Source: Oikopleura dioica
Lineage: Eukaryota > Animalia > Chordata
Assembly: GCA_907165135.1 (NCBI GenBank)
Contig: OU015566.1
Span: 4,898,001-4,962,000 of the forward strand
DNA: 64,000 nucleotides
Direction: 5' to 3'
Part shown: piece by piece, positions 4,816 through 63,130 of the stretch
How positions within the stretch are numbered: position 1 is the stretch's first letter
Layout of the letters: each line of letters starts with the position of its first letter
Notes under the pieces: model-generated
The model's input: only the letters and a program-made list of their open reading frames with translations
What the model was told of the DNA's origin: nothing
Database searches by the model: none
Position numbers and translations under genes: made by a program

Positions 4816-5302
4816 GCTTTTTTCTATCTATTTTTGGTGGTGTCTATCTTTGGGGCTTTCCTTTTGGGGCAAAACAGAAAGCCTGACACTTTTTGAAAGG
4901 AAATGACTTATAAAGGACTCTCCACCCACTGCAGCGCCCCTAACATCTGCAATGTGACCTTGGGGAGTGACCTCGAATGAATCCGACGCGTGAGAATCAC
5001 GCCACTTCGCTGACGATTGAAAAGGTTTTTCCCGGCCACAAAGAATAAACTACGATTTTAATGATTCAAGCATCTGTGCTTTTTGTAATTACGTATTTAT
5101 GCTCCTGTCTATTTTTCAGCAATATGGAAAATTTCAAAAAAAGCCAAAATTGAGTGTTTCCGAGCTTCATATTGACGTCAAATGATGCGACTATCACGCA
5201 TTATCCTAGGACCATAGGAATGTTTACAAAACAGGTCTAAATATGCAATCTTTGTGCAGTTCTCAACATTCTTTCCTGCTGACGCAACAGTTTTTTCTTT
5301 TT

Positions 5303-6022
5303 TCACAAACAAAGTTCATTTTTTATTATATCATGTTTATTCATCCGAAGGCAGTTTATTTTTGGTTCCATGGCGGACTGAATTCTTTCTTCAGCGGTTT
5401 CTTGTTCAGGCAGAATTCGCTCTTCGTAAAACTTGAAAACCAAATAGGGGCACTTCTGCTTCGCTTCTTCGGCTGTTACGATATCTGCTTGCTCACTGTT
5501 GATCCTAAATTCTTACTGAAATGCTAGAGCGAAAAGAATAGCTAACCATTTGATGATGTAATAGAGCTTCTCCTCCCCGGTTCGCTTGCCATTTTCATCA
5601 ACGATTCTTGACGCGCCAAGAATTCTTTCTGGAACCAATCCTCTTGCGAAGCCCTTTTTCGTTGCTGCTGCGAAAGAAGACGATGCTTTTCCCCTCTTGC
5701 CTCTGCCGGTCGATTTGGTGGCTTCATCCGCGGAGTTCTTTTCTAGAAAAAAATTACATCTTGAGCAAAATCAAAATCCGAAAATTACTTTCCCAATCGT
5801 CGATGATTCGTCTATCTCGAATGTTTTCTTCTGGTTCCCAAGTATCATCTTCCCTAAAAACGACTTTGTGTGAACGCTAAAACTTAGTACTTACGGCTTG
5901 TACCCCTGCCACCGAATGAGGTATTGCATCCTTCCTTCATAAAATCTCTGGCTCAGAATTTTCTCAACAACAAATTCGTCCGAAAGCATCGACTCTTGGG
6001 ATTCAGTTCCAGACTGAGACAT
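5303..6022 (-). CDS. CBX: Heterochromatin protein 1 family (chromodomain + chromoshadow), 4 exons (6022-5895, 5853-5789, 5742-5547, 5504-5303)
   Basis: Manual splicing through GT-AG introns gives EFVVEKILSQRFYEGRMQYLIRWQGYKP|EDDTWEPEENI (chromodomain) and KGFARGLVPERILGAS...YYIIKW|INSEQADIVTAEEAKQKCPYLVFKFYEERI (chromoshadow). Not visible as one ORF in the track. Confidence 0.9.
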
Positions 6023-6199
6023 TTTCTCCTTTTCTCACGGATAAGCCGGATCGCTTTGAACGCTTTTCTCTGATACTTCCCATCTAGAGAAAAAATGAGT
6101 TCGATTCTTGTCTCGTAGACAGACTCAAAATTCAACAAATAAAAAAATTTATTGATTATTTATTTTAATAAGCGTTTTTAGTAGAAAGATGCAAGTTTG

Positions 6200-6430
6200 A
6201 ACTATCAAATAAACTTTGATTCGTGATGTAAGATGCTTTTTCACACGTAAACTCTATTATGTGGCACAGACAAACTTCAAATTATTACAGAAAGAATCAA
6301 AGAAAATAAACTTTAAAAAGAGAAGAAAATGGGCACAATGTTTGAGCTGCCATTTTGGAAGCTTCAGCGTTACAGGTTACAAATTTCGGTCAATTTTCTT
6401 TCGTGAGAGTTTTTCTCTAGAATCATGATT
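6200..6430 (+). pseudogene. Truncated duplicate of the SLC17 gene 5' end (upstream region, exon 1, intron 1)
   Basis: Near copy of 12420-12655 (MGTMFELPFWKLQRYR); similarity stops just after ATCATGATT. Confidence 0.8.
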
Positions 6431-7683: not shown

Positions 7684-8620
7684 GAACAACCAAATGTACT
7701 CATTTTTGGCGTTTTTTGTGATTTTTGCTCTCTAGCGCCAACATAAGGCCGATATTTCTAATGCGGTTATTTTATTCTAATTCAGTGCGTTCTGAGCTTT
7801 CGATAGACCCTTTACAGTCAAAACGTCGAAAACTCGGTTCAGAATAACAAAAGTGTCAAAGAGGTCAGTGCTGTCCATCAAAAAGGCCATTTTGAGCTTT
7901 GCCCCTTAAAAACAGATTTTTGAGAGGAAAAATTTTTTATCGAAAATCCGCACAATTCCGGAGATTTTGCCATTTTCGCCGAAAAAAGTTCCGGAATTGT
8001 GCGTTTTGACTGTATATGTCTTCTTTCGATGACATTGAAAAACCGAAAAAATCCGATTTTCCCGTACAATAAACATGCACTTTGGAAATTTTTGATAGCT
8101 AAAATTTCGAGGAAAGATGTTCGTAAAGGGGTCATATAACACATCAAAATGATCCTCAGAACACGAGGAATCTGAAAATATCAAATATAGACCCTTATCG
8201 AGTAGTTGAAAAAACAGGGGGATCCCTTAAGGCCCCTTTTAAAATTTCTTATCATCCAAAAAGGGTTTCACTGTATATAACGCTTTCGGTGAAAAACCCT
8301 AATCATGTAAAATATTATTTATCTGAGAATCAACTCGAGATTTCAAAATCAAATTTTTGATTTTCGTTTCTTGGTCGAACTTGAAAATTCGCAGTTTTTG
8401 CTTTCGGCATTTTCCAGTCCAGTTATTTTTACTTTTGAATTAGCTTCTTTTTCATTGCCCTTTTCATTCAGTTTGATATTTTATTACTTAAAAATTGAGT
8501 CAAACAAAATCAATCTTTTCCTGAAATACTTCAAGAAAAGAGCCGTTTGAATTAAAACAAAACACAAAATCTAGTTGCTTCTTTGATTGTTGAATAAAAA
8601 ACTTGTCAAAAAATCGGATT

Positions 8621-11974: not shown

Positions 11975-12300
11975 AGTGTCCATCCATTTTCCGTCAATTC
12001 CTCAACTGCTCCTCCTGCATACCATCCTCCGATTGCAATCAAGCGTCCATTGTACAAGGCCAATTCTCCATACTTGTGTTCAAAATTCATTTCTTCTTTA
12101 CTTTCTACTGTAAACTCATCAAATGACTGACATTTGTACCGATCCGATTCAGCAAAACAAATAATCACTGAAAATAATTTTTTAACATTTTTCTTTTCAA
12201 ATTTACTCGCAACTGAATTTTTGAAGTATTTTTTTAAGTTTTTTAATAAAAAAGTAAAATAAAATTCACCTTTGCTGTTTTTCGGTCTAACTTGAAAATT
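11975..12300 (-). pseudogene. Second kelch-like family fragment ending in a (TTATAAG)n palindromic microsatellite
   Basis: IICFAESDRYKCQSFD...YGELALYNGRLIAIGGWYAGGAVEELTENGWT; the frame runs into the TATAAC/GTTATA array at 11936-11980. Confidence 0.45.
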
Positions 12301-12552
12301 CGGACTTTTTTGCTTTCGACATTTTTCAGCCCGGTTAGCTTTTTAAAGAGCCTCTTTAAAAAGGTTTACCACACAGGTTGCCGAGCCCAGAATTTCATCC
12401 ACGTTTTAATTATCAAATAAACTAAGATCTGTTATGTAAGATGCCGTTTTCACACATAAACTCCATTATGTGGCACAGACAAACTTCAAGCAAAAATACA
12501 ATCAGAAGAAGAATAAAGAATCCAAAAGAATAAAAATCATAAAGAGAAGAAA

Positions 12553-14395
12553 ATGGGTACAATGTTTGAGCTGCCATTTTGGAAGCTGCAGCGTTACAGG
12601 TAACAAATTTCGGTCGAATTTTTTCATTACAGATTTTTCTCTAGAATCATGATTTTGACAATCTTTATGAATATCACGGGATACATGATTCGCTTCGCCA
12701 TCGACGTGGCGATTCTAGACATGGTCGATGATCAGAAACGTCATCATCAAAATTCCTCCAGCTGTTCCAATTCTTCCCTGTTTTCTCCAATCAGCGAGGG
12801 GCAATTTCCTCTCGGCAAAAACCATTCTTCGCCAAAATACCACTGGACGGAGGAGCAACAAAGCATGATCATCGAAGTCTTTTTCTACGGATACACCCTT
12901 TCTGTCGGCATCGGAGGCTTGTTCGCGGATGTTCTCGGCGCAAGATTTTTGGTTGGATGCAGCGTTTTGCTTTCCGGCCTCTTGGGCATCTTTTATGAGC
13001 TTTTTGCTAGCTGGGGATTCGAGTGGCTCTGCGTTTTGAGATTTTTTCAGGGACTGCTTCAAGCTGGAATGTTTCCACCGCAAACATCGATGTGGGGCCG
13101 CTGGGCTCCAGAAAACGAGCGAACAATCATCGTTGGCGGTTCCAATGCTGCTGCTATTTTCGGCGTCTCCATGTCGAATATCCTGACTTCTGCGATTTGC
13201 GAAAGCCTCGGCTGGCCCTATGCTTTTTACATTTTCGGGAGCTTTGGGGTTCTTTTCGGATCAATTTGGATTCTTTACTTTCGAAATACACCCGAAGAAA
13301 TGCCCTGGTGCCAAATTGAAGAAAAAGAGTACATCAAAGCGAATACGACGGCCTCCGCAAGAATCGAAATCAAGGAAATACCGTTCAAGAAGATTTTTTC
13401 TTCGTTTGTTTTCTGGGTCGCTTGCATAGCAAATTTGGCGAATTCGATCATTTTCTTTACGATAACAGACAAACTACCAGAATACCTTCAGGTAAAGACC
13501 TTTTCAATCACTCTAGAATTTCTCTTCTAGAAAGTTCACCACTACAACCTCCTCGCCGACGGTTTTCTCAGCGCCCTTCCCTTCATTTGCTACCTGGTTG
13601 TTACTTTCGTTTCGTCAGCTCTCCTCGATTTCGCTCGATCGAAAAACATTCTGAGCATCACAAATTTAAGAAAAATAGCAGCGATTTTGGCACTCGTTCC
13701 TGCGGGCATTTGCTTTTTCGTCATCTCGCCAATGGGTTGTGATTCCGGGGCGATCGTTGCGCTTATGTGCGTGATAATGGGATTCAATGGGTTTTCCACG
13801 ACCTCGTTTTTGCCCTCCTTGATTGATATGTCGCCTAGCTATGCGGGTAATTAAAAGATATTGGGCTCTAAGCTCGGCAACCTGAGACTCAGGTCCTTAG
13901 TAAAAAACCTGATTCAGGGTTCTAAAAGAGTAAAATGAAAAGCCGCGTAGTGGCTTTTTTTCAAAAACGAAGCCGCAAAGCGGCTTCGCCAAAGTTACCA
14001 ACTCTATGAATTATTTTAACTAGCGTTTAAAGAAAAAGCCGCTACGCGGCTTTTCGCCTTACTCTTTTAGCACCCTGACTCAGGTTTTTTACTTAGGCTG
14101 CTATGTCCAATTCGGGTTTTTTTAGGTCTTCACTAATCCATATTCAGGTATTCTTCATGGCATCCAAGACACATGCTTTTCCGCGTTTGGTTTTATCACC
14201 CCGATTTTCATCCAAAAATGCGTCGGAGAAAACCCTTACCTCATTTCGTCCTGGAATACGGTCTGGATCATTAATGGAGCTCTCGCCTTTGTGTCTGCTG
14301 TCTTTTACGGGGCTTTCGCGACAAGTGAGAGGCAAGATTGGGACTTGAAAAAGGAGGAAAAGATGGCGTACGCAATCGGACTTTCGAAGACATAG
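12553..14395 (+). CDS. SLC17A: SLC17-family (sialin/anion:cation symporter, MFS) transporter, 4 exons (12553-12599, 12645-13491, 13531-~13847, ~14148-14395)
   Basis: YMIRFAIDVAILDMV, FFYGY, RFFQGLLQAGMFP, WGRWAPENERT, ESLGWPYAFYIFG, LIDMSPSYAG, ATSERQDW; GT-AG introns. Confidence 0.92.
13880..14095. mobile_element. Short hairpin element family with AAAACCTGAGTCAGG TIRs (intronic)
   Basis: Inverted ends; related copies at ~1279-1337, ~35597-35665, ~45858-45912, partial ~39040-39070. Confidence 0.65.
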
Positions 14396-14809
14396 AAGAC
14401 AATAATGAAAAATTTAATTCTCTTACTGAATAATAAATAAAAATTAAGTGTATTTTTTCATTACGAGCTGATTTGTCAAAATTTCAAGCCGATTTTTTTG
14501 CCAATTTTTTTATTTATTTTCGCTGACTGATTTTTTCAACCCTAAAATATTTGTTTTCGATCTAGTTCCCCTTAAAAGAAATCTGTAAAATACTGTTTTA
14601 AAATGGCTGCGCCGCGGGGAAATTTTTTATCATGATACGAGAGTCGAATACCGAAAACCCGCCGACATAATTTTTTATAAATAAAGAGAGAGATGCTCGC
14701 AAAGTTATTTTTGAAAGAACACTTGTAACTGCCCAGTTTAAAAGAGAATTTGAGCGAGATTATGTCGTCGATTTTCCAGTGAGGGATTCTAGTGATTTAA
14801 TATGTTTTT

Positions 14810-15157
14810 CTAGAAAAAATGAAAAAGAAGGAGAGATTAAAACTGAGGTCATGACTTTGGATCAACGATGTGATGAAGCCCTCGCCATTCTTGATCAGGT
14901 TCAGGGCTCATTGCCGGTTTTGCAACAAGTTTTTGATGAGAACAAGTATGTTTAATTTAAGACTTGAAAAATAAAAATGATTTAAGACTTCTTCGATTGC
15001 AGCTGAAGGAGAAACAAGCTGAGATCGAACGGCTGCGTGGAAAAATCAGGCGACTCGAAAACGCCCAGTAAGAATTGCATATTTTTCATCCCGCGATTTT
15101 TTCGGGGGTTTTTATTTCATGTTATTTCAGAATCAGCATCAGTGATGACAGCGAGTG
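14810..15157 (+). CDS. Small coiled-coil protein gene, about 3 exons
   Basis: MTLDQRCDEALAILDQVQGSLPVLQQVFDENK|LKEKQAEIERLRGKIRRLENA|QISISDDSE* across short GT-AG introns; a paralog lies at ~57560-57930 (-). Confidence 0.45.
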
Positions 15158-15220
15158 ACGCCTCATGCCGCTCTTTGCCAGCTCAATCATGCTGTTCACC
15201 ATTCACAACCATATCGCTGG

Positions 15221-15619: not shown

Positions 15620-15695
15620 TTAAAATTCTTCATAGCATTCAGGACGCATGCTTTTCCGCGTTTGGTTTTATCACCCCAATTTTCATCCAAAAATG
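15620..15695 (+). pseudogene. Isolated fragment of the SLC17 last exon
   Basis: Matches ~14148-14220 (ATGCTTTTCCGCGTTTGGTTTTATCACCCC...). Confidence 0.75.
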
Positions 15696-17139
15696 GAAGC
15701 GAATTTTCTTTTGGGACAAAATCTAGAATCAAGTTTCTAGAACAAAAAGAGCTTCAGTTTGTGGCAAACGCTAAGTTTCGAAAAAAAAAATTTTTGCTTG
15801 TACTTTTTTCGATTCGAAAAATTTCATTTTTATCGGTTCTTTTTTAGTCAAAAATGGTTCTAAAACGCTTTTTATTTCTAGTTTGACTTCAAGAAAATAG
15901 ATGGGAGTCGAGTTTTCTTCATCGAAAATTCAATAAATCGTTAAATTTTAAAACGAAACTAAATCTCGACAGGAACAAACATAATCAGCTGTTTTGTTCA
16001 AGTATTTTTTTTTGTTCTAGAATCGAGTTTGTTGAACAGAAAACAAGCTGATTACATGTATGTTACCGTCTTGAGCGGATTTCGAGTAAAATTCTACGAT
16101 TTTTCAAAAATTTCGATCCGAGAAATTTGATTCCTATCGATTTTCTTGAAGTCAAACTAAATATATTAAACCTTATTGAATTGTTTTTGACTGAAAAAGA
16201 ATCGATAAAGATGAAATTCTTCGAATCTGCCATTCAAATCGCTGATCTCCCGAATAACGAGTCGAAAAAGTGCTCAACGGAAAATTCATTTTCAATAAAG
16301 CGCTAGCGGAATTCTAGCGGCGCGATAAGCGCTCTGAGCGGGTTCTGAATGCGCGGTGTACCAGAATGTCTGAGCGTGGTCGAATCGTACCGCGCTTTTC
16401 CGCCCTTGGGCAATTTCTGCAGCTCATGAAAACGCACTACCGCGCACTATGCTGCACAACGTATCTGACACAAATTGGCCCTTTGTTATGAAAACTTTTC
16501 TTTCTCCTAAATCAACACTTTTTTGATTTCTCAGAAGTGGAAGTCTCGAAAATAAAAAGGGTAGAGAAAGAAAGGGTTGAAGACGGAAGATGAGGCTCGT
16601 GCAAATTGCGACGCTCCAAGGAAGGGAATTCAATATATAATGCAACGGGAGCCGGGCGAAAATTGACCTTTTTCGAGGGAAAGAGCCTTAATTCGAAAAG
16701 TTTGAAGGAAGAAAATAAGCGGTTTTAGCGCTTGAAAACCATGGATCACAGCGTAAAACCGGATTTTCGAGCTTTTTTTCTTGTAAAAATTAACCAGAAA
16801 AATAAAAATAAGGAGAGTTTTTATTAAGAAAAATTTTTTTATCATAAAAATTGCTCTTTGCTGCGAAAATTGTCGGATTTGATAGAATTCCTTGCTTTTT
16901 TTTTCCAAAAAATGATTCCCAAAAACAGTCATCGCAGCCCAATTCCGAAGCTTTTCTGGCTTCGGAAATGCTGCCGATCAAAGTCGACCAGAAGACCCTG
17001 GTGTTGTCCGAATGGACTTGCCGCTTAATCGAAGATACAAATATGCATTTACTGGCGCAGCGAACCCAAAGCTCAGGATTCGTAAGTAACAAGCAATTTG
17101 TCCCCAGCGGCGGAATGTTGAAAATTATTTGACCCGGAA

Positions 17140-26672: not shown

Positions 26673-27186
26673 TTTCATGCAGTCAATAAAATCACCCTCT
26701 GCAAAATTTATCCTCAAGAGTTTAGGAAACTAGAATCTACTAGGTAGATAAGGTTGTCAAAGCAATCGTCTACTACATCAGCCTATTAATCATTTTTCAA
26801 AATTTGCGACGAAAAATGCTTCCCAGATTACAAAAAATTCGACTGATTTATGGTTTTTAAAAATGAAGTAGTCTTGTATGAAAAATTTGTTAAATTCGAT
26901 CCAAAACCCATAATTATCAATATTCGTGAAATATGGAGTTTCGACTGATTTTTTCATGATATTTTTTTATTAAGACAAAGTAAATTTGAAGTGCTTTGAA
27001 AAATATTCTACGTCTGGAATTATCTCGCGAATTTCTCAACTTCTCGCGAGGTAAATAAATCTTCACATATAAAATCAACTTCACAAGCATTTTTCTCATT
27101 CCTCAGTGCGAAAATAAAAAAATTGCAAAACTTTTCTTCACACTATTTTTCATTCTGCCGGCTAATTCGCAAGAGATTTCTTCGAG

Positions 27187-29668
27187 ATGCTTTCCTTTTG
27201 GTTAGCATCAGCTTTTCTCCGTCTCGGCTGGGCCCAGATAACATGCGATAATGAGAACTGCCCGAACCCGACCGGAACTTCTTACGAGACGAAATTGAAT
27301 TGCGGCGTTTTGGTCAACGATGGAACCAATGGACAGTCGAAAAAGTGCGCGTATTTGATGAAAACGAGGGAGAATGGCCGGAGTCGAACGCTTTTTGCTC
27401 TGCGCTAAAATTTACAATCAACGGAACGGAAGTCGAGGGAGGAAATATGCTGTCAATCAGATCGCCTGAAGAAAATGAAGTCATCAGACAGTACCTCATC
27501 GGACTCATGGACGGAGCAAACGTCTACTACTATCCCCGAATCGGGCTTCGAAAAACATGCCAAAACTGCGAGTGGTACTGGTCCGACGGGAGTCCAATTA
27601 CTTACACCAATTGGTACGGAACCGAGCCAAATACCTACTACTACGATTGCGCCAGAATCTAGTAAGTCGTTCTTGAAATCTTCGCTAAATAAAAATTCTA
27701 GTTATTCGAGCAACGGCGCTGTTTACAACGGAACTTGGATAGACATAACCTGCACGGGAATCTACTCAGATCTGTGCCAATTCGAAGTCGATGGAAAACA
27801 ACCTTGGGATCCAGAGCCAGACAATGGTCTACCCGCCAAAGGAGGTTGCAAACCCGGCTGGTACCCCTTCGGCGGCTACTGCTACAAATTCGACGGTTTT
27901 CGGGTCGATGGCGGATCAGGTTTCGACCCAGCTGGATTTTTGAAGTGGAATGATGCGCGAGCAAAATGCAACGAGGACTGGGAAGGAGCTGATTTGGCCA
28001 TGCTTCCGACAGCAGAGCACAATTCTCTGGTCGCATCGCTACTTGGGCCGTGGTTTTTCGGGGCGGATCCGTTTATCGGAGTTTACAATCATGCTTATTA
28101 TGATTATTACTTCAGGTTTTAGCTCTCCTCTTTGACCCCTAATCGAATATTCTTGCTAGTCTGATCAACGAAGACCGCCTCAAATACGACAACTGGGTGC
28201 CCGGCAAGCCCAATCACGCCCAAAGTACCCAAGACAAATGCGTCGTCATGTCCTGGCGAAACGACGCAAATTTCCACGATGCTTTCCGAGTTGGTCAATG
28301 GAACAACGTCTACTGCGGCACTTACGCAACCGCTGGCAATTATGGCGATCCCCACCCGTGGGTTTGCTCGCACGAACAGAGTTCTAGCTATCAGTCGCAG
28401 TACCCGACTTGGATTTCGCTGCCCGATGTGAAATGCGGTCCCGGTTGGATTCCTTACCATTCTGCTTGCTACAAGGTTTTTGTTTCTTTATCATTTCTTG
28501 ATTCAATCATTGTTGTTTTCAGCTATTTACTGATCGAAAACCCTTCGATGATGCAAACAAATATTGTTCGGAAAATGGCGAGTCGGCAGCAAAAGCAACC
28601 TATTTGATCACAATGTGGGACGAGTACGAAGTCGAGTTTGCCAAATCCTTCTTCCGGGACGATCAACTCCCGCAGCGAAAGCCAACAGATCTGCCAGACG
28701 GTATCTGGATCGGTCTCAAGAAAAAGTAAGCACAAGAAGTTTGATTTTTGGAATTCCTCTTTTAAGTGATCGGCAAGGAAGCGACAGATTCGAATGGATC
28801 GATGGAGTGCCACTGACGCGTCAAGATTGGGCTGGCGACTCTGGAAATCAGCCCTGCGCGTTTTGGACTCGGAGACGAAAATGTACAAGACCTCCGGCTG
28901 CTCCGAGCAAAAGCGTTCATTTGCAAAAGCGAGTTCTACGAGGTCCCGCTCAACTCATACGAAGACATCGATGCAAAGCTCGGGAAGCCTCAGGAATGCC
29001 CCGATGGTTGGAGCCTCCTCGGCCACCACTGCACGAGAATCTACGAGGAGGCGCAGCCGTATTCACAAGCCGCCATGCAATGCAAAATCCAAGGCGGCAA
29101 TCTCGGCAGCATCCACTCCTCCGGCTACAACAGAATCATAAAAGACCAGTTCACGAAAACTGCCCACGCCGAAAACTCGATGTGGATCGGAATGCAGTAC
29201 AAAGGCGCTTTCGGCTGGCAGTGGGACGATGGAACAGGCGCCAGCTATTTTAACTGGGAAAATGGGGAGCCGAATGATTGGCAAGAGCCGGAAGATTGCG
29301 TGGCGATGGATGAGATTGGCACTTGGAAGGACTCGCCGTGTCGGGAATCGAAACCGTTCCTCTGCAAAAAGGTCGCTCCGACTGAATTTTGCACTGCCGC
29401 GATTTCGAGCAAAATCAAGTCTTGTGGATTCGTCGGCATTTCGGAGACAGAGTGCATGTTGGAATTCGGATGCTGTTTCGACCCAACAATCGACTCGGGC
29501 ATGGGCAACAACTGTTTCCAACCAAAGCCTCCGGTCGACGTCGGCATGGCCGCAGGCGCTGCTGTCGGCGTCACCGTCTTTGTCATTGCCGCTGTTGCTG
29601 GAGGATTCTTTTTCTACACGAAGAGAAATGAAGCCACTATCGGCGGCATTACCAATCCTCTTGCTTGA
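27187..29668 (+). CDS. Type I membrane receptor: 4 C-type lectin domains + trefoil (P-type) domain + TM, copy 1 (three 1-nt frameshifts)
   Basis: WIGL/WIGM and EPN motifs, WND/WKD, CxxGW starts; CGFVGISETECMLEFGCCFD trefoil; TM AAGAAVGVTVFVIAAVAGGFFFY; tail GGITNPLA*. Confidence 0.88.
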
Positions 29669-29875
29669 ACTTTTTCTTTATTTTATTTTCCTTACTTTCT
29701 TCTGCAATAAAAATCTCAAGGCGAGTTAAAACAAGCACAATTGAAATTAATTGATCATGGGCTATTCCTCCATGATTTCATGCAGTCAATAAAATCACCC
29801 TTAGCACCTGTTATTCTAGAATCATTTTTTGACAACTAGTTTTGTCAAAAGCAGAAAACAGTATCAGTTTGAAAA

Positions 29876-34220: not shown

Positions 34221-35171
34221 TAATTTTTTGTTAGAGTTTTTGGTGAGAAAATCTTTCTGGTTATTTGTATAAAGAATCACTTTTAGTGTCAACGTTACGA
34301 TAACAATTATGAAACTTTTTAGAAAAGAGCTTCAAAAACCATAATACTCGGTTAAATTTGATCATTTGGGTTTTATTTTTGAAAACAGGACTGAGCAACA
34401 AAGAATACTTAGTGTCTGTACATCAAAACGTCGTCTCCAGAACTCAACTGGAGACGAAAACTAGACTACTGTCTGATAAGAGGAAGAATCGGCGCAGGCC
34501 AAAAAATAGTATTGAGTCTAAGTTTGAAAGGTTTCAAGAGTAAAATTCTAAATAAACAGACTAAACAAGACTATGGAAATTTCCATTTGGATTTTGATAA
34601 CCAATAAGATTGCTGTATTTGGCCTACCAGCCAATGAAAACCCTGATCCGTAATATCACTCCTATAAATTGGTTTTACCCAAATTTCTCCAAATTTCTGT
34701 TTTTCCTCATTTCTATTGAGCGCGGTGATTTCGAGTGGAAATGAGTGCTTTGATTAAAAGAAAATTTGCGGTGTTGGAAAAAGCGCGCTCTAAAAAGGTT
34801 GATTCTAGTTTTGATTACCAAGAGCGACTCATTTACGCGGCTCTTTTCTACTCGAAATTTTCAATTTTCGCGTAAGAGGCAACTCGTCCTCCGATTTCCT
34901 TCAAAACTCAGAAATTTTGAAAAATTTTTTCTTGATAAAAATCTTTAATGATATCGTTTACTGAAAGGAAACCCAAAAGTAGTGGCAGGACCAGACACTT
35001 GGCTAAAGTATTTTCGCATCATTTCATCGTCGAATTCGTCCATGGCATCGAGAGCAAGCTGCTTTTGGTCGGCGCGAGAAGCGCGGTACTCTTTATGTAA
35101 TCACTCATGAAGTTTTCGGGCGGATCGTGGTGCTCCTAAAAAAGGTTACTGATTTTTCCCACGCGATTTTC

Positions 35172-57394: not shown

Positions 57395-57555
57395 AAAATC
57401 ATAACTATGTTTTAACTCGCCATGAGATTTTTATTGCAGAAGAAAGTAAGGAAAATTAAATAAAGAAAAATTTTTAAGCGAGAGGATTGGTAATGCCGCC
57501 AATAGTGGCTTCATTTCTCTTCGTGTAGAAAAAGTATCCTCCAGCAACAGCGGCA
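57395..57555 (-). pseudogene. Third fragment of the lectin receptor: tail + 3' UTR
   Basis: AAVAGGYFFYTKRNEATIGGITNPLA* plus AATAAAAATCTC UTR, matching 29588-29735. Confidence 0.85.
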
Positions 57556-57559
57556 TGAG

Positions 57560-57930
57560 GCGTTACTCGTCATCGCTAATTGCTATGCTATAATAACATA
57601 TTTAAAAATCCCCAAGACAATCAAGAAATGATATGAACTTACGGTTCGGTATGTTGGGAGTTCAGTCGGTGAATTTCCTCGCGCAGCTTTTCGATTTCTT
57701 TTTCTTTTTCGGCGAGCTTCTTATCCCGAAGCCTGAAATTATTTCATGAGAAAAATAAATAAAGATAACTGAATTCATTTTCTACAAACGACTTTGAATT
57801 ATACTGCATAATTTATACATACTTAATTTCGTCTTCGTATTTTTGCTCGAATTTTTCAACTAGCTTTCGAATTTTAAGCAAAAATTCATTGAATTCGGCA
57901 TCTTCTTCTTTCATTTTTTCTAAGAAGCAA
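57560..57930 (-). CDS. Diverged paralog of the 14810-15157 coiled-coil gene
   Basis: KLAEKEKEIEKLREEIHRLNS; same exon layout; 3' GATGACGAGTAACGCCTCATGCCGCT matches the 15145-15172 region. Confidence 0.45.
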
Positions 57931-58149
57931 TCTTTAATCACTACAATTCTTCACAAAAAAAGGAACATTCTCAATTTTAGGTGGCATAATTTCTCTCTAA
58001 AATGGGCACAGTAAAATTTAATTCGCGAGTATCTCTCTTTTTTTCGTTAAAAAATGATGCCGGTGGATTTCTCGGTTTCGACTTACGTATCAAGATTAAA
58101 AAATTTCCCCGCGGCACTGCCATTTTATAACAATCAATTTTTTCTTTAT

Positions 58150-58860
58150 TGTCTTCTATATCTTCGAAAGTCGGATTCTCAACTCCTTCTTCAAATCTCA
58201 ATCTTGCCTTTAACTCGTTGCAAAGACCCTGTAAAAGATAGCAGACACAAAGGCGAGAGTTCCATTGATTATCCACACCGTATTCCAGGACGACATTAGG
58301 TCTTCTCCCACACATTTTTGGATGAAAATTGGGGTCATAAAACCAAACGCGGAAAAGCATGTGTCTTGGATCCCATGAAGAATACCTGAAGATAGATTAG
58401 TGAAGACCCTAAAAACCAAAGTTCCATCAGATACGCGCATAGCTGGGAGACATATCAATCAAGGAGGGCAAAAACGATGTCGTGGAGAATCCATTGAATC
58501 CCATTATCACACACATAAGCGCAACGATCGCCCCGGAATCAGGGGAAATGACGAAAAAGAAAATGCCCGCAAGACCGAGAGCCTGAACCGCTGTTATTTT
58601 TTGAAGATTTGTGATGCTCAGAATGTTTTTCGATTGAGCGAAATCGAGTAGAGCTGATGAAACGAAAGTAACTACCAGGTAGCAAATAAAAGGAAGGGCG
58701 CTGAGAAAACCGTCGGCGAGGAGGTTGTAGTGGTGAACTTTCTAGAAGAAAATTTCTAGAGTGATTGACAAGGTCTCTACCTGAAGGTATTCTGGCAGTT
58801 TGTCCGTAATTGTAAAGAAAATGAATCATTTTAAATGATCGAATTTGCCACATTTGACAT
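58150..58860 (-). pseudogene. SLC17 pseudogene (3' half only)
   Basis: Homologous to 13425-14410; in-frame TAA (58210-58212) and TGA for TGG (58198-58200). Confidence 0.85.
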
Positions 58861-58946
58861 TCTGACAGACATTGTCTGTTTTGAGCACATCAGGATTTCA
58901 TCGCAAGAAAAAATTCAAATCGACTCCAATCGGGAAGAGTTTTCCC

Positions 58947-59260
58947 GGAAGATGATACTTGGGAATTTCAACAAGAATTTAGGGTCAACAGTGAGCAAGC
59001 AGATATCGTAACAGCCGAAGAAGCGAAGCAGAAATGCACCTACTTGGTTTTCAAGTTTTACGAAGAGAGAATTCTGCCTGAACAAGAAACAGCTGAAGAG
59101 AGGATTCAGTCCGCAATGCAACCCAAAAATAAAATGTCTTTGAATAAATAAAGACATCACAAAAGAATAAACTTTGCCTATCAAGAAAGAAGTGTTGCGT
59201 CAGCAGGAAAGAATGTTGAGAACTGCACGAAGATTCTTTTGACCTGTTTTGAAAACATCC
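58947..59260 (+). pseudogene. Internally deleted HP1 paralog
   Basis: GGAAGATGATACTTGGGA (chromodomain end) joined directly to the sequence before the last chromoshadow exon (VNSEQADIVTAEEAKQKCTYLVFKFYEERI); ~310 bp missing relative to 5835-5522. Confidence 0.82.
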
Positions 59261-59567
59261 CGATCCCAGTCCAAGGATCAAAGAAGACGCTCAATTTTGG
59301 CCTTTTTTTAATTTTTCATATTGCGGAAACTGGACGAATTCAACGAACAAATGACGAGAAAAACTTTAGCCAAGTTTCTGGTCCTGCCACTACTTTTAGG
59401 TTTCCTTTCAATAATCGATATCATTAAAAATATCAAAATACAGAAGAAGCACTCATTTCCACTCTTAATCACCGCGCTCAAAATCAGAATAAAGATAATC
59501 ATGTTTTCACTCGCCATGAGATTTTTATTGCAGAAGAAAATATGAAAAAGAAAATAAAGAAAAGCTT

Positions 59568-62115
59568 TTAAGCAAGAGGATTGGTAATGCCGCCAATAGT
59601 GGCTTCATTTCTCTTCGTGTAGAAAAAGTATCCTCCGGCAACAGCAGCAATGACGAAGACGGTGACGCCGACAGCAGCGCCTGCGGCCATGCCAACGTCG
59701 ACCGGAGGCTTCGGTTGGAAGCAGTTGTTGCCCATGCCCGAGTCGATTGTTGGGTCGAAACAGCATCCGAATTCTAGCATGCACTCTGTCTCCGAAATGC
59801 CGACGAATCCACAAGACTTGATTTTACTCGAAATCGCGGCAGTGCAAAACTCGGTCGGAGCGACCTTTTGCAGAGGAACGGTTTCGTTTCTCGACACGGC
59901 GAGTCCTTCCAAGTGCCAATCTCGTCCATGGCCACGCAATCTTCCGGCTCTTGCCAATCATTCGGCTCCCCATTTTCCCAGTTAAAGTAGCTGGCGCCAG
60001 TTCCATCGTCCCACTGCCAGCCGAAAGCGCCTTTGTACTGCATTCCGATCCACATCGAGTTTTCGGCGTGGGCGATTTTCGTGAACTGGTCTTTTATGAT
60101 TCTGTTGTAGCCGGAGGAGTGGATGCTGCCAAGATTGCCGCCTTGGATTTTGCATTGCATGGCGGCTTGTGAATACGGCTGCGCCTCGCTGTAGATTCTT
60201 GTGCAGTGGTGACCAAGGAGGCTCCAGCCATCGGGGCATTCCTGAGGCTTTCCGAGCTTTGCATCGATGTCTTCGTATGAATTGAGCGGGACCTCGTAGA
60301 ACTCACTTTTGCAAATAAACGCTTTTTGCTCGGAACAGCCGGAGGTCTTGTACATTTTCGTCTCCGAGTCCAAAAACGCGCAGGGCTGATTTCCAGAGTC
60401 TCCAGCCCAATCTTGACGCGTCAGTGGAACTCCGTCGATCCATTCGAATCTGTCGCTTCCTTGTCGATCACTGAAAAGAGCGGTTTGAAAGGAAACAAGC
60501 TTCTTGAGCTTACTTTTTCTTGAGACCGATCCAGATTCCATCTGGCAGATCTGTTGGCTTTCGCTGCGGGAGTTGATCGTCCCGGAAGAAGGATTTGGCA
60601 AACTCGACTTCGTACTCGTCCCACATCGTCATCAAATAGGTTGCTTTGGCTGCGGACTCGCCATTTTCGGAGCAAAATTTGTTTGCATCGTCGAAGGGTT
60701 TTCGGTCAGTGAATAACTAAAAACCATAAAGAGGGAAAATTTTTAATAGAAAACCTTGTAGCAAGCAGAATGGTAAGGAATCCAACCCGGCCCGCATTTC
60801 ACATCGGGCAGCGAAATCCAAGTCGGGTACTGCGACTGATAGCTAGAACTCTGTTCGTGCGAACAAACCCACGGGTGAGGATCGCCAAAATTGCCAGCGG
60901 TTGAGTAAGTGCCGCAGTAGACGTTGTTCCATTGGCCGACTCGGAAAGCATCGTGGAAATTCGCGTCGTTTCGCCAGGACATGACGACGCATTTGTCTTG
61001 GGTGGATTGGGCGTGATTGGGCTTTCCCGGAACCCAGTTGTCGTATTTTAGGCGGTCTTCGTTGATGAGACTAAAATAAGTATTCGTTTGCGGGATCAAA
61101 GAGGAGAGCGAATACCTGAAGTAATAATCATAATAAGCATGATTGTAAACTCCAATAAACGGATCCGCCCCGAAAAACCACGGCCCAAGAAGCGATGCAA
61201 CCAACGAATTGTGCTCTTCTGTCGGAAGCATGGCCAAATCAGCTCCTTCCCAGTCCTCGTTGCATTTTGCTCGCGCATCATTCCACTTCAAAAATCCAGC
61301 CGGGTCGAAACCTGATCCGCCATCGACCCGAAAACCGTCGAATTTGTAGCAGTACCCGCCGAATGGATACCAGCCAGGTTTGCAACCTCCCTTGGCGGGG
61401 AGACCATTGTCTGGCTCAGGATCCCAAGGTTGTTTTCCATCGACTTCGAATTGGCAAAGATCGGAGTAGATACCCGTGCAAGTCATGTCCATCCACGTTC
61501 CGTTGTAAACAGCACCATTACTCGAATAGCTTGATTTTTATTTCGGGAATTTTCGACAGATACTTACTAAAATCGAGCACAATCGTAGGAGTTCGTATTC
61601 GGCTCCGTTCCGTACCAATTCGTGTAAGTGATTGGACTACCGTCGGACCAGTACCACTCACAGTTTTGACATGTTTTTCGAAGCCCGATTCGTGGATAGT
61701 AATAGACGTTTGCTCCGTCCATGAGCGCGATGATCATCTGGCGAATGACTTCGTTTTCTTCAGGCGATCTTATTGAGAGCATATTTCCACCCTTTAATTT
61801 CAGTCAACAATTTTTCAGAGATAAATGCCAAAAAAAGCTTCTCTTAGGAAACGTGAAATTTACCTCGACTTCAGTTCCGTTGATTGTAAATTTGAGTCCA
61901 GAGCAAAAAGCGTTCGATTCCGGCCATTCTCCCCTCGTTTTCATCAAATACGCGCATTTTTTCGACCGTCCATTTGTTCCATCGTTGACCAAAACGCCGC
62001 AATTGAGCTTTGTCTCGTAAGAAGTTCCAGCCGGGTTCGGGCAGTTCACATTATCGCATTGAATCTGAGCCCAGCCAAGACGGAGAAAAGCTGATGCTAA
62101 CCAAAAGGATAGCAT
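59568..62115 (-). CDS. 4xCTLD + trefoil + TM receptor, copy 2 (inverted paralog; 1-nt frameshift at ~59866; extra intron 61792-61863)
   Basis: Collinear with 27187-29668; similarity extends upstream to ~62282 (vs ~27027). Confidence 0.88.
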
Positions 62116-63130
62116 CGCGGTGAAATCTCTTTGAATGAACCGGCAGAATGGGAAAAAGTGTGAAGAAAAGTTTTGCAATTTTATTTTATTTTCGCACTGA
62201 GGAATGAAGAAAAATGCTCGTCGATTGCGATTTTATATGTGAAGTTTTATTTACCTCGCGAGAAGTTGAGAAATTCGCGAGATTCTGTACATTCTCTTTT
62301 TATTCATTTCATTGTTAAAATATCAGACACGAAAACTCTCCGAATTGACAGTAAACAGAACCGGGTAAGAATTTTCAGCTTCATGATGATAAATAAACAA
62401 TCGGGAAAAAACCAAGAAAAGACTCCAGTTCTGCGATTCTTTGAAGTCAAACTAAGAAGAAATTGCTTATTCCATTCATCTTTGACTTCAAGAAAATCGA
62501 AACACATAAAATCGGCGCTTTCGAAAAATCATCAAATCGAAAAATTTTCATAAAGAAGTACTTCGGAAACAATCTTCTAGAACCATGTTTAATGATATTT
62601 GTTATTATTCCATACCAATTTCAAGTGTAAAATTTTGATGTTTTTTCGATAAGAAATATACAATCCCCGCTGGCTTTTTTGAAGACAAAAACGATTCTTC
62701 AAGAGTTTATCTGCTTATTTTGACTTCAGTTAAATAAAGATCAGTTGCAAATTGAAACTTTCAAATCGACGACCTGTATTGAAGTTCTAAGTCAAGGTCT
62801 GGAAGATCTCTTATGAAAAGCTGTTCTAGAAACGATTCCGTAAAAATTATTTTTCAATCAATAAGCAAATTCTTGCGAAGCCGCTTTACGGCATCATTTT
62901 TGGCTCTAGAATCGTAACTTGAAGTGATTTTCGTAAAACTAAGACGGTCAAATTTTTTCTAGATTTTCTCCACTCATTCAATATATGCATGGTGTTCTAG
63001 GTCTTAAAATGAGGAAGTGGGTGAAAAAAATTTATAAGCTCTATTTTTAGAGCTTAGACACCTTCGTCGAAAATCTTCAACAAGAACCAAAGTAAAGAAT
63101 GAATAGGAGAATCAGTGAGAACCTAAAAAT

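What the first reader, a model, noticed from the sequence alone, without database searches (positions are those of the whole stretch)
57395..62282. Inverted patchwork locus built from four distant parts of the same window
Seen: read on the minus strand, this block is lectin gene (from 27.0-29.7 kb), a piece matching ~34950-35050 (59320-59440), deleted HP1 (5.2-5.85 kb), SLC17 3' half (13.4-14.4 kb), coiled-coil gene (14.8-15.2 kb), then lectin 3' end (29.6-29.7 kb). Every piece is inverted relative to its source. The order 27->35, then 5->13->15->29.6 is collinear within two runs. Inference: a compacted remnant of a head-to-tail double copy, or a circular intermediate, of the 5-35 kb segment, inverted and eroded by large deletions so that only the lectin and perhaps the coiled-coil gene survived. 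This would be a local snapshot of genome scrambling.
Basis: partly seen in the sequence, partly recalled or inferred. Interest (0 to 1): 0.75.

Follow-up and report, generated by a model that had tools for sequence, protein, structure and literature searches.

The report
Eroded inverted copy of a gene cluster
A 4.9-kb stretch of the Okinawa Oikopleura dioica genome is the shrunken, inverted and order-shifted leftover of an old copy of a neighbouring ~30-kb gene cluster; this is a known kind of event, but its junctions give a close view of how this animal's scrambled genome gets rearranged.

Summary
Window 57401-62283 consists of at least 11 collinear pieces, all inverted, that match only 27.0-29.7, 34.7-35.0, 5.1-5.9, 13.4-15.2 and 29.6-29.7 kb of this window and nowhere else in the 64.3-Mb genome (O. 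dioica OKI2018_I69).

The genes are a multi-CTLD/trefoil/TM lectin, the C-terminal end of an unnamed gene X, an HP1-like chromo/chromoshadow gene, a sialin-like SLC17 gene and a small coiled-coil gene.

Synonymous divergence is the same in lectin (0.28), SLC17 (0.32) and HP1 (0.28-0.44) (p=0.36), so the pieces share one age. Lectin B is under strong purifying selection (dN/dS 0.06). The coiled-coil gene keeps an open three-exon frame and now uses a second copy of the lectin 3' end as its 3'UTR.

The truncated HP1 and SLC17 fragments evolved under partial constraint on the block's own branch. This fits a large functional copy eroded later better than a patchwork born in one step.

One junction shows 6-10 nt of microhomology. 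One "deletion" is actually a MITE inserted in the source. A tandem copy, a circle and a single template back-jump cannot be told apart. The divergence excludes a haplotig.

Verdict: a real feature, a new member of a known kind, of moderate interest.

The parts
61863..62283 (-). Lectin B promoter/5'UTR and exon 1 (= source 27022-27438)
   Evidence: 90% identity. The 165-bp upstream part has K2P of only 0.10 and carries paired TCTCGCGA motifs.
61794..61865 (-). 72-bp GT-AG intron present in lectin B and precisely absent from lectin A
   Evidence: Alignment of the two copies.
59502..61793 (-). Lectin B exons 2-6 and 3'UTR (= source 27436-29733): C-type lectin domains, trefoil domain, TM segment
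   Evidence: 91.8% over 2304 nt. Pfam Lectin_C 2e-25 and Trefoil 1e-5. Over 763 codons dS 0.28, dN/dS 0.06, no stop in the shared frame. One 1-bp homopolymer break at 59870.
59495..59649 (-). R1: last 26 codons plus 3'UTR of lectin B, first copy of the 155-bp direct repeat
   Evidence: 92% to R2 and 91% to source 29587-29733.
59447..59481 (-). X1: 35-nt piece of the 3' flank of gene X (= 34716-34750)
   Evidence: 94% identity, E 8e-9.
59331..59431 (+). X2: last ~33 codons and 3'UTR of gene X (source minus strand, 34941-35042); truncated fragment
   Evidence: 89% identity. Translation matches the C-terminus of the source ORF 34948-35100(-).
59287..59329 (+). Sequence downstream of HP1 (= 5114-5157). 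Together with X2 it forms the permutation junction 35042|5114 at 59331|59329
   Evidence: 86% identity; junction view.
58965..59278 (+). HP1-like gene, 3' exon: C-terminal half of the chromoshadow domain plus tail (= 5203-5522)
   Evidence: 84% identity. Pfam Chromo_shadow positions 22-50 of 52, 6e-7. First 45 codons dS 0.28, dN/dS 0.07.
58947..58965 (+). 19-nt remnant of the HP1 chromodomain exon (= 5835-5853), joined directly to the chromoshadow exon; 312 bp missing between them
   Evidence: Exact match, E 2e-5; the reading frame shows EDDTWE joined to the chromoshadow part.
58854..58946 (.). Filler of about 90 nt with no match in the window, between the HP1 and SLC17 remnants
   Evidence: A sensitive search found nothing above chance.
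58132..58853 (-). SLC17 (sialin-like) 3' half: end of exon a, exons b and c, 3'UTR (= 13428-13849 and 14119-14419)
   Evidence: 89% and 83% identity. Over 202 codons dS 0.32, dN/dS 0.17. Three coding indels of 9, 6 and 12 nt are in frame, plus a 14-nt out-of-frame insertion at the truncated edge. Two stops lie only in the C-terminal tail.
57902..58132 (-). Intergenic stretch between SLC17 and the coiled-coil gene (= 14594-14830)
   Evidence: 71% identity; K2P 0.43.
57565..57941 (-). Coiled-coil gene copy: three exons, open frame, same splice phases as the source gene at 14.83-15.16 kb
   Evidence: Translations and splice sites. Exon 2 dN 0.53. No other paralog in the genome.
57401..57555 (-). 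R2: second copy of the lectin 3' end (= 29587-29733). It starts ~15 nt after the coiled-coil stop codon and supplies an AATAAA signal
   Evidence: 94.6% to the source. The junction shares TCAT(T)GCCGCT with both parents.
5114..5860 (-). Source: HP1-like gene 3' part and downstream flank (the whole gene spans about 5306-6034)
   Evidence: Pfam Chromo in two exon pieces and Chromo_shadow.
13428..15175 (+). Source: SLC17 3' half (the gene starts at 12649) and the coiled-coil gene
   Evidence: MFS_1 7e-32; sialin structures 1e-38.
27022..29733 (+). Source: lectin A
   Evidence: Three 1-bp homopolymer breaks at 27367, 28860 and 28908.
34716..35042 (-). Source: 3' end and flank of gene X

Best explanation
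The block is what remains of one old, large, inverted DNA-level duplication of the neighbouring cluster HP1(-) - SLC17(+) - coiled-coil(+) - lectin(+) - X(-), roughly 5.1-35.0 kb in today's coordinates. The copy covered more than one unit length. It ran from the lectin promoter (27022) to inside the last exon of X (35042), jumped back to just beyond the 3' end of HP1 (5114), and ran on through SLC17, the coiled-coil gene and a second lectin to the lectin poly(A) region (~29743). This made three lectin lineages (A, B and a lost C) at about the same time. Shown: the common age, the permuted order, the truncations, the selection signatures and the junction sequences. Inferred: for most of the time since then, the copied HP1, SLC17 and second lectin stayed under selection. 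Later deletions, in roughly the last 10-40% of that time, removed the 5' parts of HP1 and SLC17 with everything between them, the stretch between lectin B and X, and the 14-kb stretch from the coiled-coil 3'UTR into the second lectin. The last deletion joined two GCCGCT-containing microhomologies, as expected from microhomology-mediated end joining in an animal that lacks classical NHEJ. It left the coiled-coil gene with the lectin's 3'UTR and poly(A) signal. Lectin B and probably the coiled-coil copy are still genes. X', HP1' and SLC17' are dead fragments. Meanwhile the source grew by insertions: one MITE is shown, and larger ones are likely.
For: Pieces, order and orientation. Unique to this locus. 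One age: dS is 0.28 for lectin (CI 0.23-0.34), 0.32 for SLC17 (0.22-0.45) and 0.28-0.44 for HP1, with between-gene homogeneity p=0.36. Neutral stretches have K2P 0.26-0.56. DNA-level copy: introns and intergenic DNA are retained. Block is the derived side: X is cut inside its last exon; HP1 lacks its chromodomain and start codon; SLC17 lacks its first ~270 codons. Late erosion: SLC17' has pairwise dN/dS 0.17. With outgroup P0012, 7 of 7 polarisable changes and a 3-codon deletion fall on the block branch, giving branch omega ~0.41, below neutrality (Fisher p=0.004, assuming all non-synonymous changes lie on the block branch and synonymous changes split equally). Its three internal coding indels are in frame. 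The HP1' chromoshadow exon has dN/dS 0.07. R2 has ~3 private changes in 147 nt, and its single coding change is synonymous. Three-way origin: A, R1 and R2 form an unresolved trichotomy when rooted with L004/L005. Microhomology at the coiled-coil|R2 junction. MITE insertion in the source. Loss of NHEJ, active MMEJ and the unresolved scrambling breakpoints in this species: PMC11067885.
Against: No read-level or cross-population data could be consulted, so neither the junctions nor the timing are independently verified. The branch omega of 0.41 could also reflect relaxed selection from the start on fragments that kept some function. Only one junction shows clear microhomology; the others show 0-1 nt or are blurred by ~30% divergence. 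Coiled-coil exons 1-2 are much more diverged (JC ~0.66) than the other coding pieces, and dS inside the lectin is heterogeneous (0.47 against 0.20), so gene conversion or unequal rates complicate dating. Shrinking ~33 kb to 4.9 kb needs several deletions, which is less parsimonious than a one-step patchwork.
Confidence: 0.6

Rival explanations
1. One-step replicative patchwork (FoSTeS/MMBIR-type). A broken fork or break-induced replication copied 27022-29743, switched to 34.7-35.0, back to 5.1-5.9, on to 13.4-15.2 and finally to 29.6-29.7 kb. The fragments were therefore born truncated and no later large deletions are needed.
For: All pieces are short, in one orientation and collinear within runs, with one backward jump. 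There is microhomology at the coiled-coil|R2 junction and a ~90-nt untemplated filler at HP1|SLC17. The age is the same for all pieces. Small templated copies occur nearby, such as the 71-bp SLC17 piece at 15625-15695. This is more parsimonious in number of events.
Against: Born-dead fragments should evolve neutrally on the block branch, giving a pairwise dN/dS of about 0.5. Observed values are 0.17 for SLC17' (CI 0.10-0.29; branch omega 0.41, p=0.004 against neutrality) and 0.07 for the HP1' chromoshadow exon. The internal coding indels are in frame, and R2 has almost no private changes. At least one 'skip' is a later MITE insertion in the source.
Confidence: 0.2
2. Two or more independent inverted duplications (lectin-X, and HP1-SLC17-coiled-coil-lectin) happened to land side by side.
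For: The two collinear runs could be two separate copies. The region shows other local duplications (255-bp repeat 6.2/12.4 kb).
Against: The age is the same for both runs. They abut within 1-2 nt, have identical orientation, and the lectin 3' ends form a trichotomy. Two independent landings at the same spot are improbable.
Confidence: 0.07
3. Assembly artefact: a retained haplotig or chimeric join made by Canu/HaploMerger2.
For: The assembly started at 99 Mb and was haplotype-merged; heterozygosity is ~3.6%. 1-bp homopolymer errors seem to be present in both lectin copies.
Against: Divergence from the sources is 5-30% with dS ~0.3, about ten times allelic divergence. The order is permuted and inverted, not allelic. 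Each diverged piece exists only here, so no other place in the genome could have supplied it. Selection signatures differ by piece as real paralogs would.
Confidence: 0.04
4. Gene-fragment capture by a transposon (Helitron, Pack-MULE-like or composite element) that picked up pieces of neighbouring genes.
For: Patchworks of gene fragments in one orientation are typical of Helitron capture. MITEs and foldback elements are abundant in the window, and one hairpin lies 160 bp from the block's right end.
Against: It is single copy in the genome. There are no terminal inverted repeats or target duplications at the ends. The pieces keep the source order and spacing logic, including promoters, introns and intergenic DNA. 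No transposase or Rep/helicase frame lies in or next to the block.
Confidence: 0.02
5. Reversed polarity: the compact order in the block is ancestral and the 5-35 kb region is the rearranged, expanded copy.
For: A cyclic permutation is symmetric. The source has clearly been expanded by insertions.
Against: X, HP1 and SLC17 are complete and constrained in the source and truncated in the block. The outgroup shows that the SLC17 changes lie on the block branch. The junction 35042|5114 cuts the coding exon of X.
Confidence: 0.03

Closest known systems
Intrachromosomal inverted segmental duplication followed by pseudogenisation and deletion of redundant copies
   Same: A DNA-level copy with introns, promoters and intergenic DNA; kilobase scale; ~92% identity in the largest piece; one paralog pair kept under purifying selection and the others decaying.
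   Different: The copy is circularly permuted with terminal redundancy (more than one unit length). It has been reduced about seven-fold, to a mosaic of 20-2700-bp pieces within 4.9 kb.
Complex rearrangements by serial template switching (FoSTeS/MMBIR; DUP-TRP/INV-DUP structures of human genomic disorders). Comparison from my own knowledge of that literature
   Same: Inverted copy; one region (the lectin 3' end) present three times; a backward jump; microhomology at a junction; a short untemplated filler.
   Different: Selection signatures indicate that the truncations came later than the copying. Most junctions show no resolvable microhomology.
Microhomology-mediated end-joining scars in O. 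dioica, which lacks classical NHEJ (Deng et al. 2018, as cited in PMC11067885)
   Same: The coiled-coil|lectin junction retains one copy of a 6-nt exact (10-nt imperfect) motif present at both parental sites.
   Different: The experimental MMEJ deletions cited there came from induced lesions. Here a ~14-kb natural deletion is inferred, and only one of about 8 junctions is clear.
Genome scrambling between O. dioica lineages (Plessy et al. 2024, PMC11067885)
   Same: Short functional units are relocated within a chromosome arm and breakpoints lie near exon and gene ends. The lectin's neighbour in another population lies 2.9 Mb away in this genome.
   Different: That work compares lineages and could not resolve molecular breakpoints. 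This is a within-genome paralogous copy whose junctions can be read against their parental sequences.
Re-integration of extrachromosomal circular DNA or rolling-circle products
   Same: A cyclic permutation of the gene order with a single novel head-to-tail junction and terminal redundancy.
   Different: No direct evidence of a circle. The same footprint arises from a tandem duplication or one template switch.

Membership tests
Segmental duplication (DNA-mediated) | Copy of unique, non-transposon sequence of at least 1 kb at high identity | tested here: met
   2304 nt at 91.8% plus 10 smaller pieces. Matches occur only in this window genome-wide.
Segmental duplication (DNA-mediated) | Introns, promoters and intergenic DNA are copied (not a processed copy) | tested here: met
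   Lectin B keeps all introns plus one more. SLC17' and the coiled-coil copy keep their introns. The SLC17-coiled-coil spacer is copied.
Segmental duplication (DNA-mediated) | All parts have one age | tested here: met
   dS homogeneous between the three genes, p=0.36. Caveat: dS is heterogeneous inside the lectin gene.
Processed retrocopy | Intronless, poly(A) tail, short target duplications | tested here: not met
   Introns are present in every copied gene. No poly(A) tract at the ends.
Transposon-mediated gene capture (Helitron / Pack-MULE) | Element termini (TIRs or Helitron ends) and target-site duplication | tested here: not met
   Comparing the ends gives only chance matches, E >= 0.19. 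Helitron-specific termini were only inspected by eye.
Transposon-mediated gene capture (Helitron / Pack-MULE) | Multiple copies of the chimeric element in the genome | tested here: not met
   Single copy.
MMBIR/FoSTeS one-step complex rearrangement | Microhomology of 2-15 nt at the junctions | tested here: inconclusive
   Clear at one junction: GCCGCT exact, TCAT(T)GCCGCT imperfect. The others show 0-1 nt or are unresolvable after ~30% divergence.
MMBIR/FoSTeS one-step complex rearrangement | Fragments truncated from birth, hence neutral evolution of the truncated coding pieces | tested here: not met
   SLC17' branch omega ~0.41, p=0.004 against neutrality; HP1' exon dN/dS 0.07; internal indels in frame.
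Circular-intermediate (eccDNA) re-insertion | Cyclic permutation with one head-to-tail junction | tested here: met
   Junction 35042|5114 at block 59331|59329. This feature is not specific to circles.
Circular-intermediate (eccDNA) re-insertion | Direct evidence of the circle (circle-seq, split reads) | not testable with these tools
   No read data available.
Retained haplotig / mis-assembly | Allelic-level divergence, collinear with its allele, half read depth | tested here: not met
   dS ~0.3 against ~3.6% heterozygosity; order permuted and inverted. Read depth could not be tested.

The most novel reading that the evidence does not exclude
The block is the footprint of a circular or rolling-circle DNA intermediate excised from 5.1-35.0 kb and re-inserted, inverted, 22 kb away. 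Such permuted, terminally redundant re-insertions, later trimmed by microhomology-mediated deletions, would be a recurrent vehicle of gene-order scrambling in NHEJ-deficient Oikopleura. The scan's unchecked notes list at least one other inverted, circularly permuted duplication, and long flanking duplications around insertions, in this genome.
Probability: 0.15. Interest if true: 0.7.

Novelty: new member of a known kind. Interest (0 to 1): 0.38.

Why it matters
O. dioica has the most scrambled gene order known among animals. The authors of that discovery state that they could not identify precise molecular breakpoints or a mechanism (PMC11067885).

A within-genome paralogous rearrangement keeps both the rearranged copy and its parental sequences, so junctions can be read base by base. 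Here that shows four things:
- a permuted copy longer than one unit, made at a single time;
- later deletions, one of them with an MMEJ-type microhomology;
- a gene (the coiled-coil copy) that acquired another gene's 3'UTR through such a deletion;
- parallel growth of the source by transposon insertion.

This is a worked example, not a new principle. Its value would grow if the same architecture proves common in this genome or polymorphic within the Okinawa lineage.

Tried and rejected
- Metagenome contigs: these gave four lectin orthologs. Only L005 has flanking DNA, and its neighbour gene maps 2.9 Mb away in this genome, so it does not say which lectin copy sits in the ancestral context.
- Rooting A/R1/R2 with these outgroups: an unresolved trichotomy.
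- The apparent shared end of R1 and R2 at A 29733 first looked like a common breakpoint. The outgroup's homology stops at the same place, so it is only the end of the conserved 3'UTR.
- Short exact matches between the right flank (62441-62500) and 15.88-16.16 kb looked like a further patchwork piece but are the terminal motif of a foldback/MITE.
- The gaps 34751-34940 and 14420-14593 are unique sequence, so insertion and deletion cannot be told apart there.
- Transposon termini at the block ends: none.
- Other paralogs of the coiled-coil gene as alternative donors: none.
All protein searches were done exon by exon, by reference, so full-length lectin or SLC17 relatives outside the length window of the search for homologous proteins were not sought.
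- The window is not human sequence.

Full report
ORGANISM AND ASSEMBLY

The window is contig C4:4898001-4962000 of a genome of 64,281,565 bases in 19 contigs. That length is identical to the one listed for Oikopleura dioica OKI2018_I69_1.0 (Okinawa lineage; Nanopore + Illumina + Hi-C) in Table 1 of PMC11067885. The first SLC17 exon finds an O. dioica protein at 74% identity. The assembly came from one male, built with Canu, polished with Racon and Pilon, and haplotype-merged with HaploMerger2. Heterozygosity is ~3.6%, and the authors themselves warn about Nanopore homopolymers (PMC8008620). The sequence is not human.

THE OBSERVATION

Read on the minus strand, the block holds these source segments in this order:
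- 27022-29733
- 34716-34750
- 34941-35042
- 5114-5157
- 5203-5522
- 5835-5853 (19 nt exact)
- 13428-13849
- 14119-14419
- 14594-14830
- 15095-15175
- 29587-29733

Every piece is inverted relative to its source. A whole-genome search finds these pieces nowhere else. No homology continues outside 57401-62283, even at protein level. The two copies of the lectin 3' end inside the block, R1 (59495-59649) and R2 (57401-57555), are direct repeats.

THE GENES

- The lectin has C-type lectin domains, a trefoil domain and a TM segment.
- 'HP1' is a real heterochromatin-protein-1-like gene on the source minus strand, with Chromo in two exon pieces and Chromo_shadow.
- SLC17 is an MFS transporter whose best solved relatives are sialin and VGLUT.
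- X is an unnamed minus-strand gene of which the block holds the last ~33 codons.
- The coiled-coil gene is a three-exon gene of ~65 codons with no detectable relatives apart from its weakly similar partner copy in this window.

In the source the orientations are HP1(-), SLC17(+), coiled-coil(+), lectin(+), X(-).

AGE

All statistics were computed exon by exon (Nei-Gojobori).
- Lectin A against B: 763 codons, dS 0.28 (bootstrap 0.23-0.34), dN/dS 0.06, no stop in the shared frame.
- SLC17 fragment: 202 codons, dS 0.32 (0.22-0.45).
- HP1 3' exon: dS 0.44, or 0.28 over the chromoshadow part.

Synonymous differences are homogeneous between the three genes (p=0.36). Inside the contiguous lectin gene they are not (exons 1+2 at 0.47 against the last exon at 0.20, p=0.001). 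Differences between segments are therefore no larger than differences within one gene. Unconstrained stretches have K2P 0.26-0.56. Coiled-coil exon 2 differs at 29 of 66 nt (JC 0.66), at the upper edge of that range. The outgroup contig L005 is only ~72% identical at DNA level, so the duplication is much younger than the split from that population.

WHICH SIDE IS DERIVED

X is cut inside its last exon exactly at the junction with the HP1 downstream flank (35042|5114 = block 59331|59329). HP1 in the block has no start codon and no chromodomain apart from 19 nt joined directly to the second half of the chromoshadow domain. SLC17 lacks its first ~270 codons. The source genes are complete. With the metagenomic outgroup P0012, all 7 polarisable amino-acid differences in SLC17 exon b, and a 3-codon deletion, lie on the block's branch. 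The block is the derived copy.

BORN AS A PATCHWORK OR ERODED LATER

If the fragments had been dead since the copying, pairwise dN/dS should be near 0.5 and the block branch near 1.

For SLC17', the observed pairwise value is 0.17 (CI 0.10-0.29). If all non-synonymous changes are assigned to the block branch and synonymous changes are split equally, the branch value is ~0.41, below neutrality (Fisher p=0.004). Its three internal coding indels (9, 6 and 12 nt) are in frame, and its only stops lie in the C-terminal tail.

The HP1' chromoshadow exon has dN/dS 0.07.

R2 is now non-coding, yet it has only ~3 private changes in 147 nt, where ~20 would be expected for neutral sequence of this age, and its single coding-part change is synonymous.

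I infer that HP1, SLC17 and a second lectin were intact and selected in the copy for most of its history. By inference, the large deletions fell in roughly the last 10-40% of that time. This favours erosion of a large copy over a one-step template-switch mosaic, though not decisively.

THE THREE LECTIN 3' ENDS

Rooted with L004 and L005, the four substitutions that R1 and R2 share against A are all private to A. The other sites conflict: 3 favour A+R2, 1 favours A+R1, and 1-2 indels favour R1+R2. This is a trichotomy, as expected if A, B and the lost second copy arose together. Homology of A, R1 and R2 stops at one shared point. The outgroup stops there too, so this marks the end of the conserved 3'UTR, not a breakpoint.

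JUNCTIONS

- Coiled-coil 3'UTR | R2: both parents carry TCAT(T)GCCGCT and the block keeps one copy. This is the footprint of microhomology-mediated joining. It lies ~15 nt after the coiled-coil stop codon, so the gene now runs into the lectin's 3'UTR with its AATAAA signal.
- HP1 5522|5835: 1 nt.
- X|HP1: none resolvable.
- HP1|SLC17: a ~90-nt filler without any match.
- The remaining junctions are blurred by divergence.

O. dioica lacks classical NHEJ and repairs induced breaks by MMEJ (Deng et al. 2018, as cited in PMC11067885). That paper also says breakpoints of the inter-lineage scrambling could not be resolved.

NOT ALL GAPS ARE DELETIONS

The 270 bp missing between the two SLC17 pieces is a MITE in the source intron, from a family with more than 1000 first-look candidates. 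The gaps 34751-34940 and 14420-14593 are unique sequence. The source also carries a 255-bp direct repeat (6189-6430 / 12397-12654, K2P 0.23). It places a copy of the SLC17 upstream region and start codon next to the HP1 promoter, which suggests HP1 and SLC17 were once adjacent and were later separated by ~6 kb. Measured in today's source coordinates the original copy would be ~33 kb; it was probably shorter.

WHAT SURVIVES

Lectin B is under strong purifying selection. It has one 1-bp break in an A-run, and copy A has three such breaks. Outgroup frames are continuous across all of them. With dN/dS 0.06 these are most likely residual Nanopore homopolymer errors, or else extremely recent lesions. 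The coiled-coil copy has an open frame, conserved GTAAG donors and conserved splice phases despite very high divergence. X', HP1' and SLC17' are fragments.

ALTERNATIVES

- A haplotig is excluded by divergence and by the permuted order.
- Transposon capture lacks termini, target duplications and further copies.
- A retrocopy is excluded by the retained introns.
- Reversed polarity is excluded by the truncations and the outgroup.
- Tandem duplication, a circle or rolling circle, and a single backward template switch all predict the same junction 35042|5114 and cannot be separated with sequence alone.

LIMITS

There are no read data. Earlier scan notes (unchecked) mention another inverted, circularly permuted duplication and long flanking duplications around insertions in this genome. 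I used them only as leads.

VERDICT

This is a real, well-delimited, complex segmental duplication of one age, later eroded. It is a new member of a known kind, with moderate interest as a base-pair-level example of rearrangement in a genome famous for scrambling.

Noticed in passing
window 6189-6430 and 12397-12654 (also 8366-8431 / 12277-12345): A 255-bp direct repeat (80% identity, K2P 0.23) places a copy of the SLC17 upstream region and start codon ~150 bp from the HP1 start. HP1 and SLC17 were probably adjacent divergent genes, later separated by ~6 kb, at an age similar to the block's.
   Followed up: partly
window 15625-15695: A third, 71-bp copy of SLC17 last-exon sequence (93% to 14150-14220, 91.5% to block 58313-58383) lies 0.4 kb downstream of the source coiled-coil gene. 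It looks like a small templated insertion.
   Followed up: no
window 13895-14101: A palindromic MITE sits inside the SLC17 intron of the source and is absent from the block copy. Its family has more than 1000 first-look candidates genome-wide.
   Followed up: yes
window 61794-61865 vs 27435/27436: A 72-bp GT-AG intron is present in lectin B and precisely absent from lectin A. It was also noted separately by the scan (s1-371638).
   Followed up: partly
window 27367, 28860, 28908 (lectin A); 59870 (lectin B); ~59362 (X fragment): Single-base deletions in short homopolymer runs break otherwise strongly conserved reading frames. Outgroup frames are continuous across the lectin sites. These are probably residual Nanopore errors.
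   Followed up: partly
window 27023-27052 and ~62250-62282: The 165 bp upstream of the lectin start codon is far better conserved between the copies (K2P 0.10) than introns or synonymous sites. It carries two TCTCGCGA motifs and is a likely core promoter.
   Followed up: no
window 14830-15160 and 57565-57941: The small coiled-coil gene pair is extremely diverged (exon 2 dN 0.53) yet keeps open frames and splice phases. The only relative of either copy detectable in the genome is the other copy. It is a candidate fast-evolving gene.
   Followed up: partly
L005:1400-4387 and G000:C4:2008962-2011073: In a metagenomic Oikopleura contig, the gene next to the lectin ortholog maps 2.9 Mb from the lectins on the same chromosome in this genome. 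This is an instance of intrachromosomal scrambling.
   Followed up: partly
window 15811-16227; 62441-62500 and 62710-62728: A foldback/MITE with 172-nt arms; its terminal motif TTTGACTTCAAGAAAAT recurs as a hairpin 160 bp from the right end of the block.
   Followed up: partly
window 27187-27661 vs 28767-29665: Synonymous divergence between the lectin copies is 0.47 in exons 1+2 (window peak 0.94) and 0.20 in the last exon (p=0.001). This suggests gene conversion of the 3' part, or replacement of the 5' part linked to the intron loss.
   Followed up: partly
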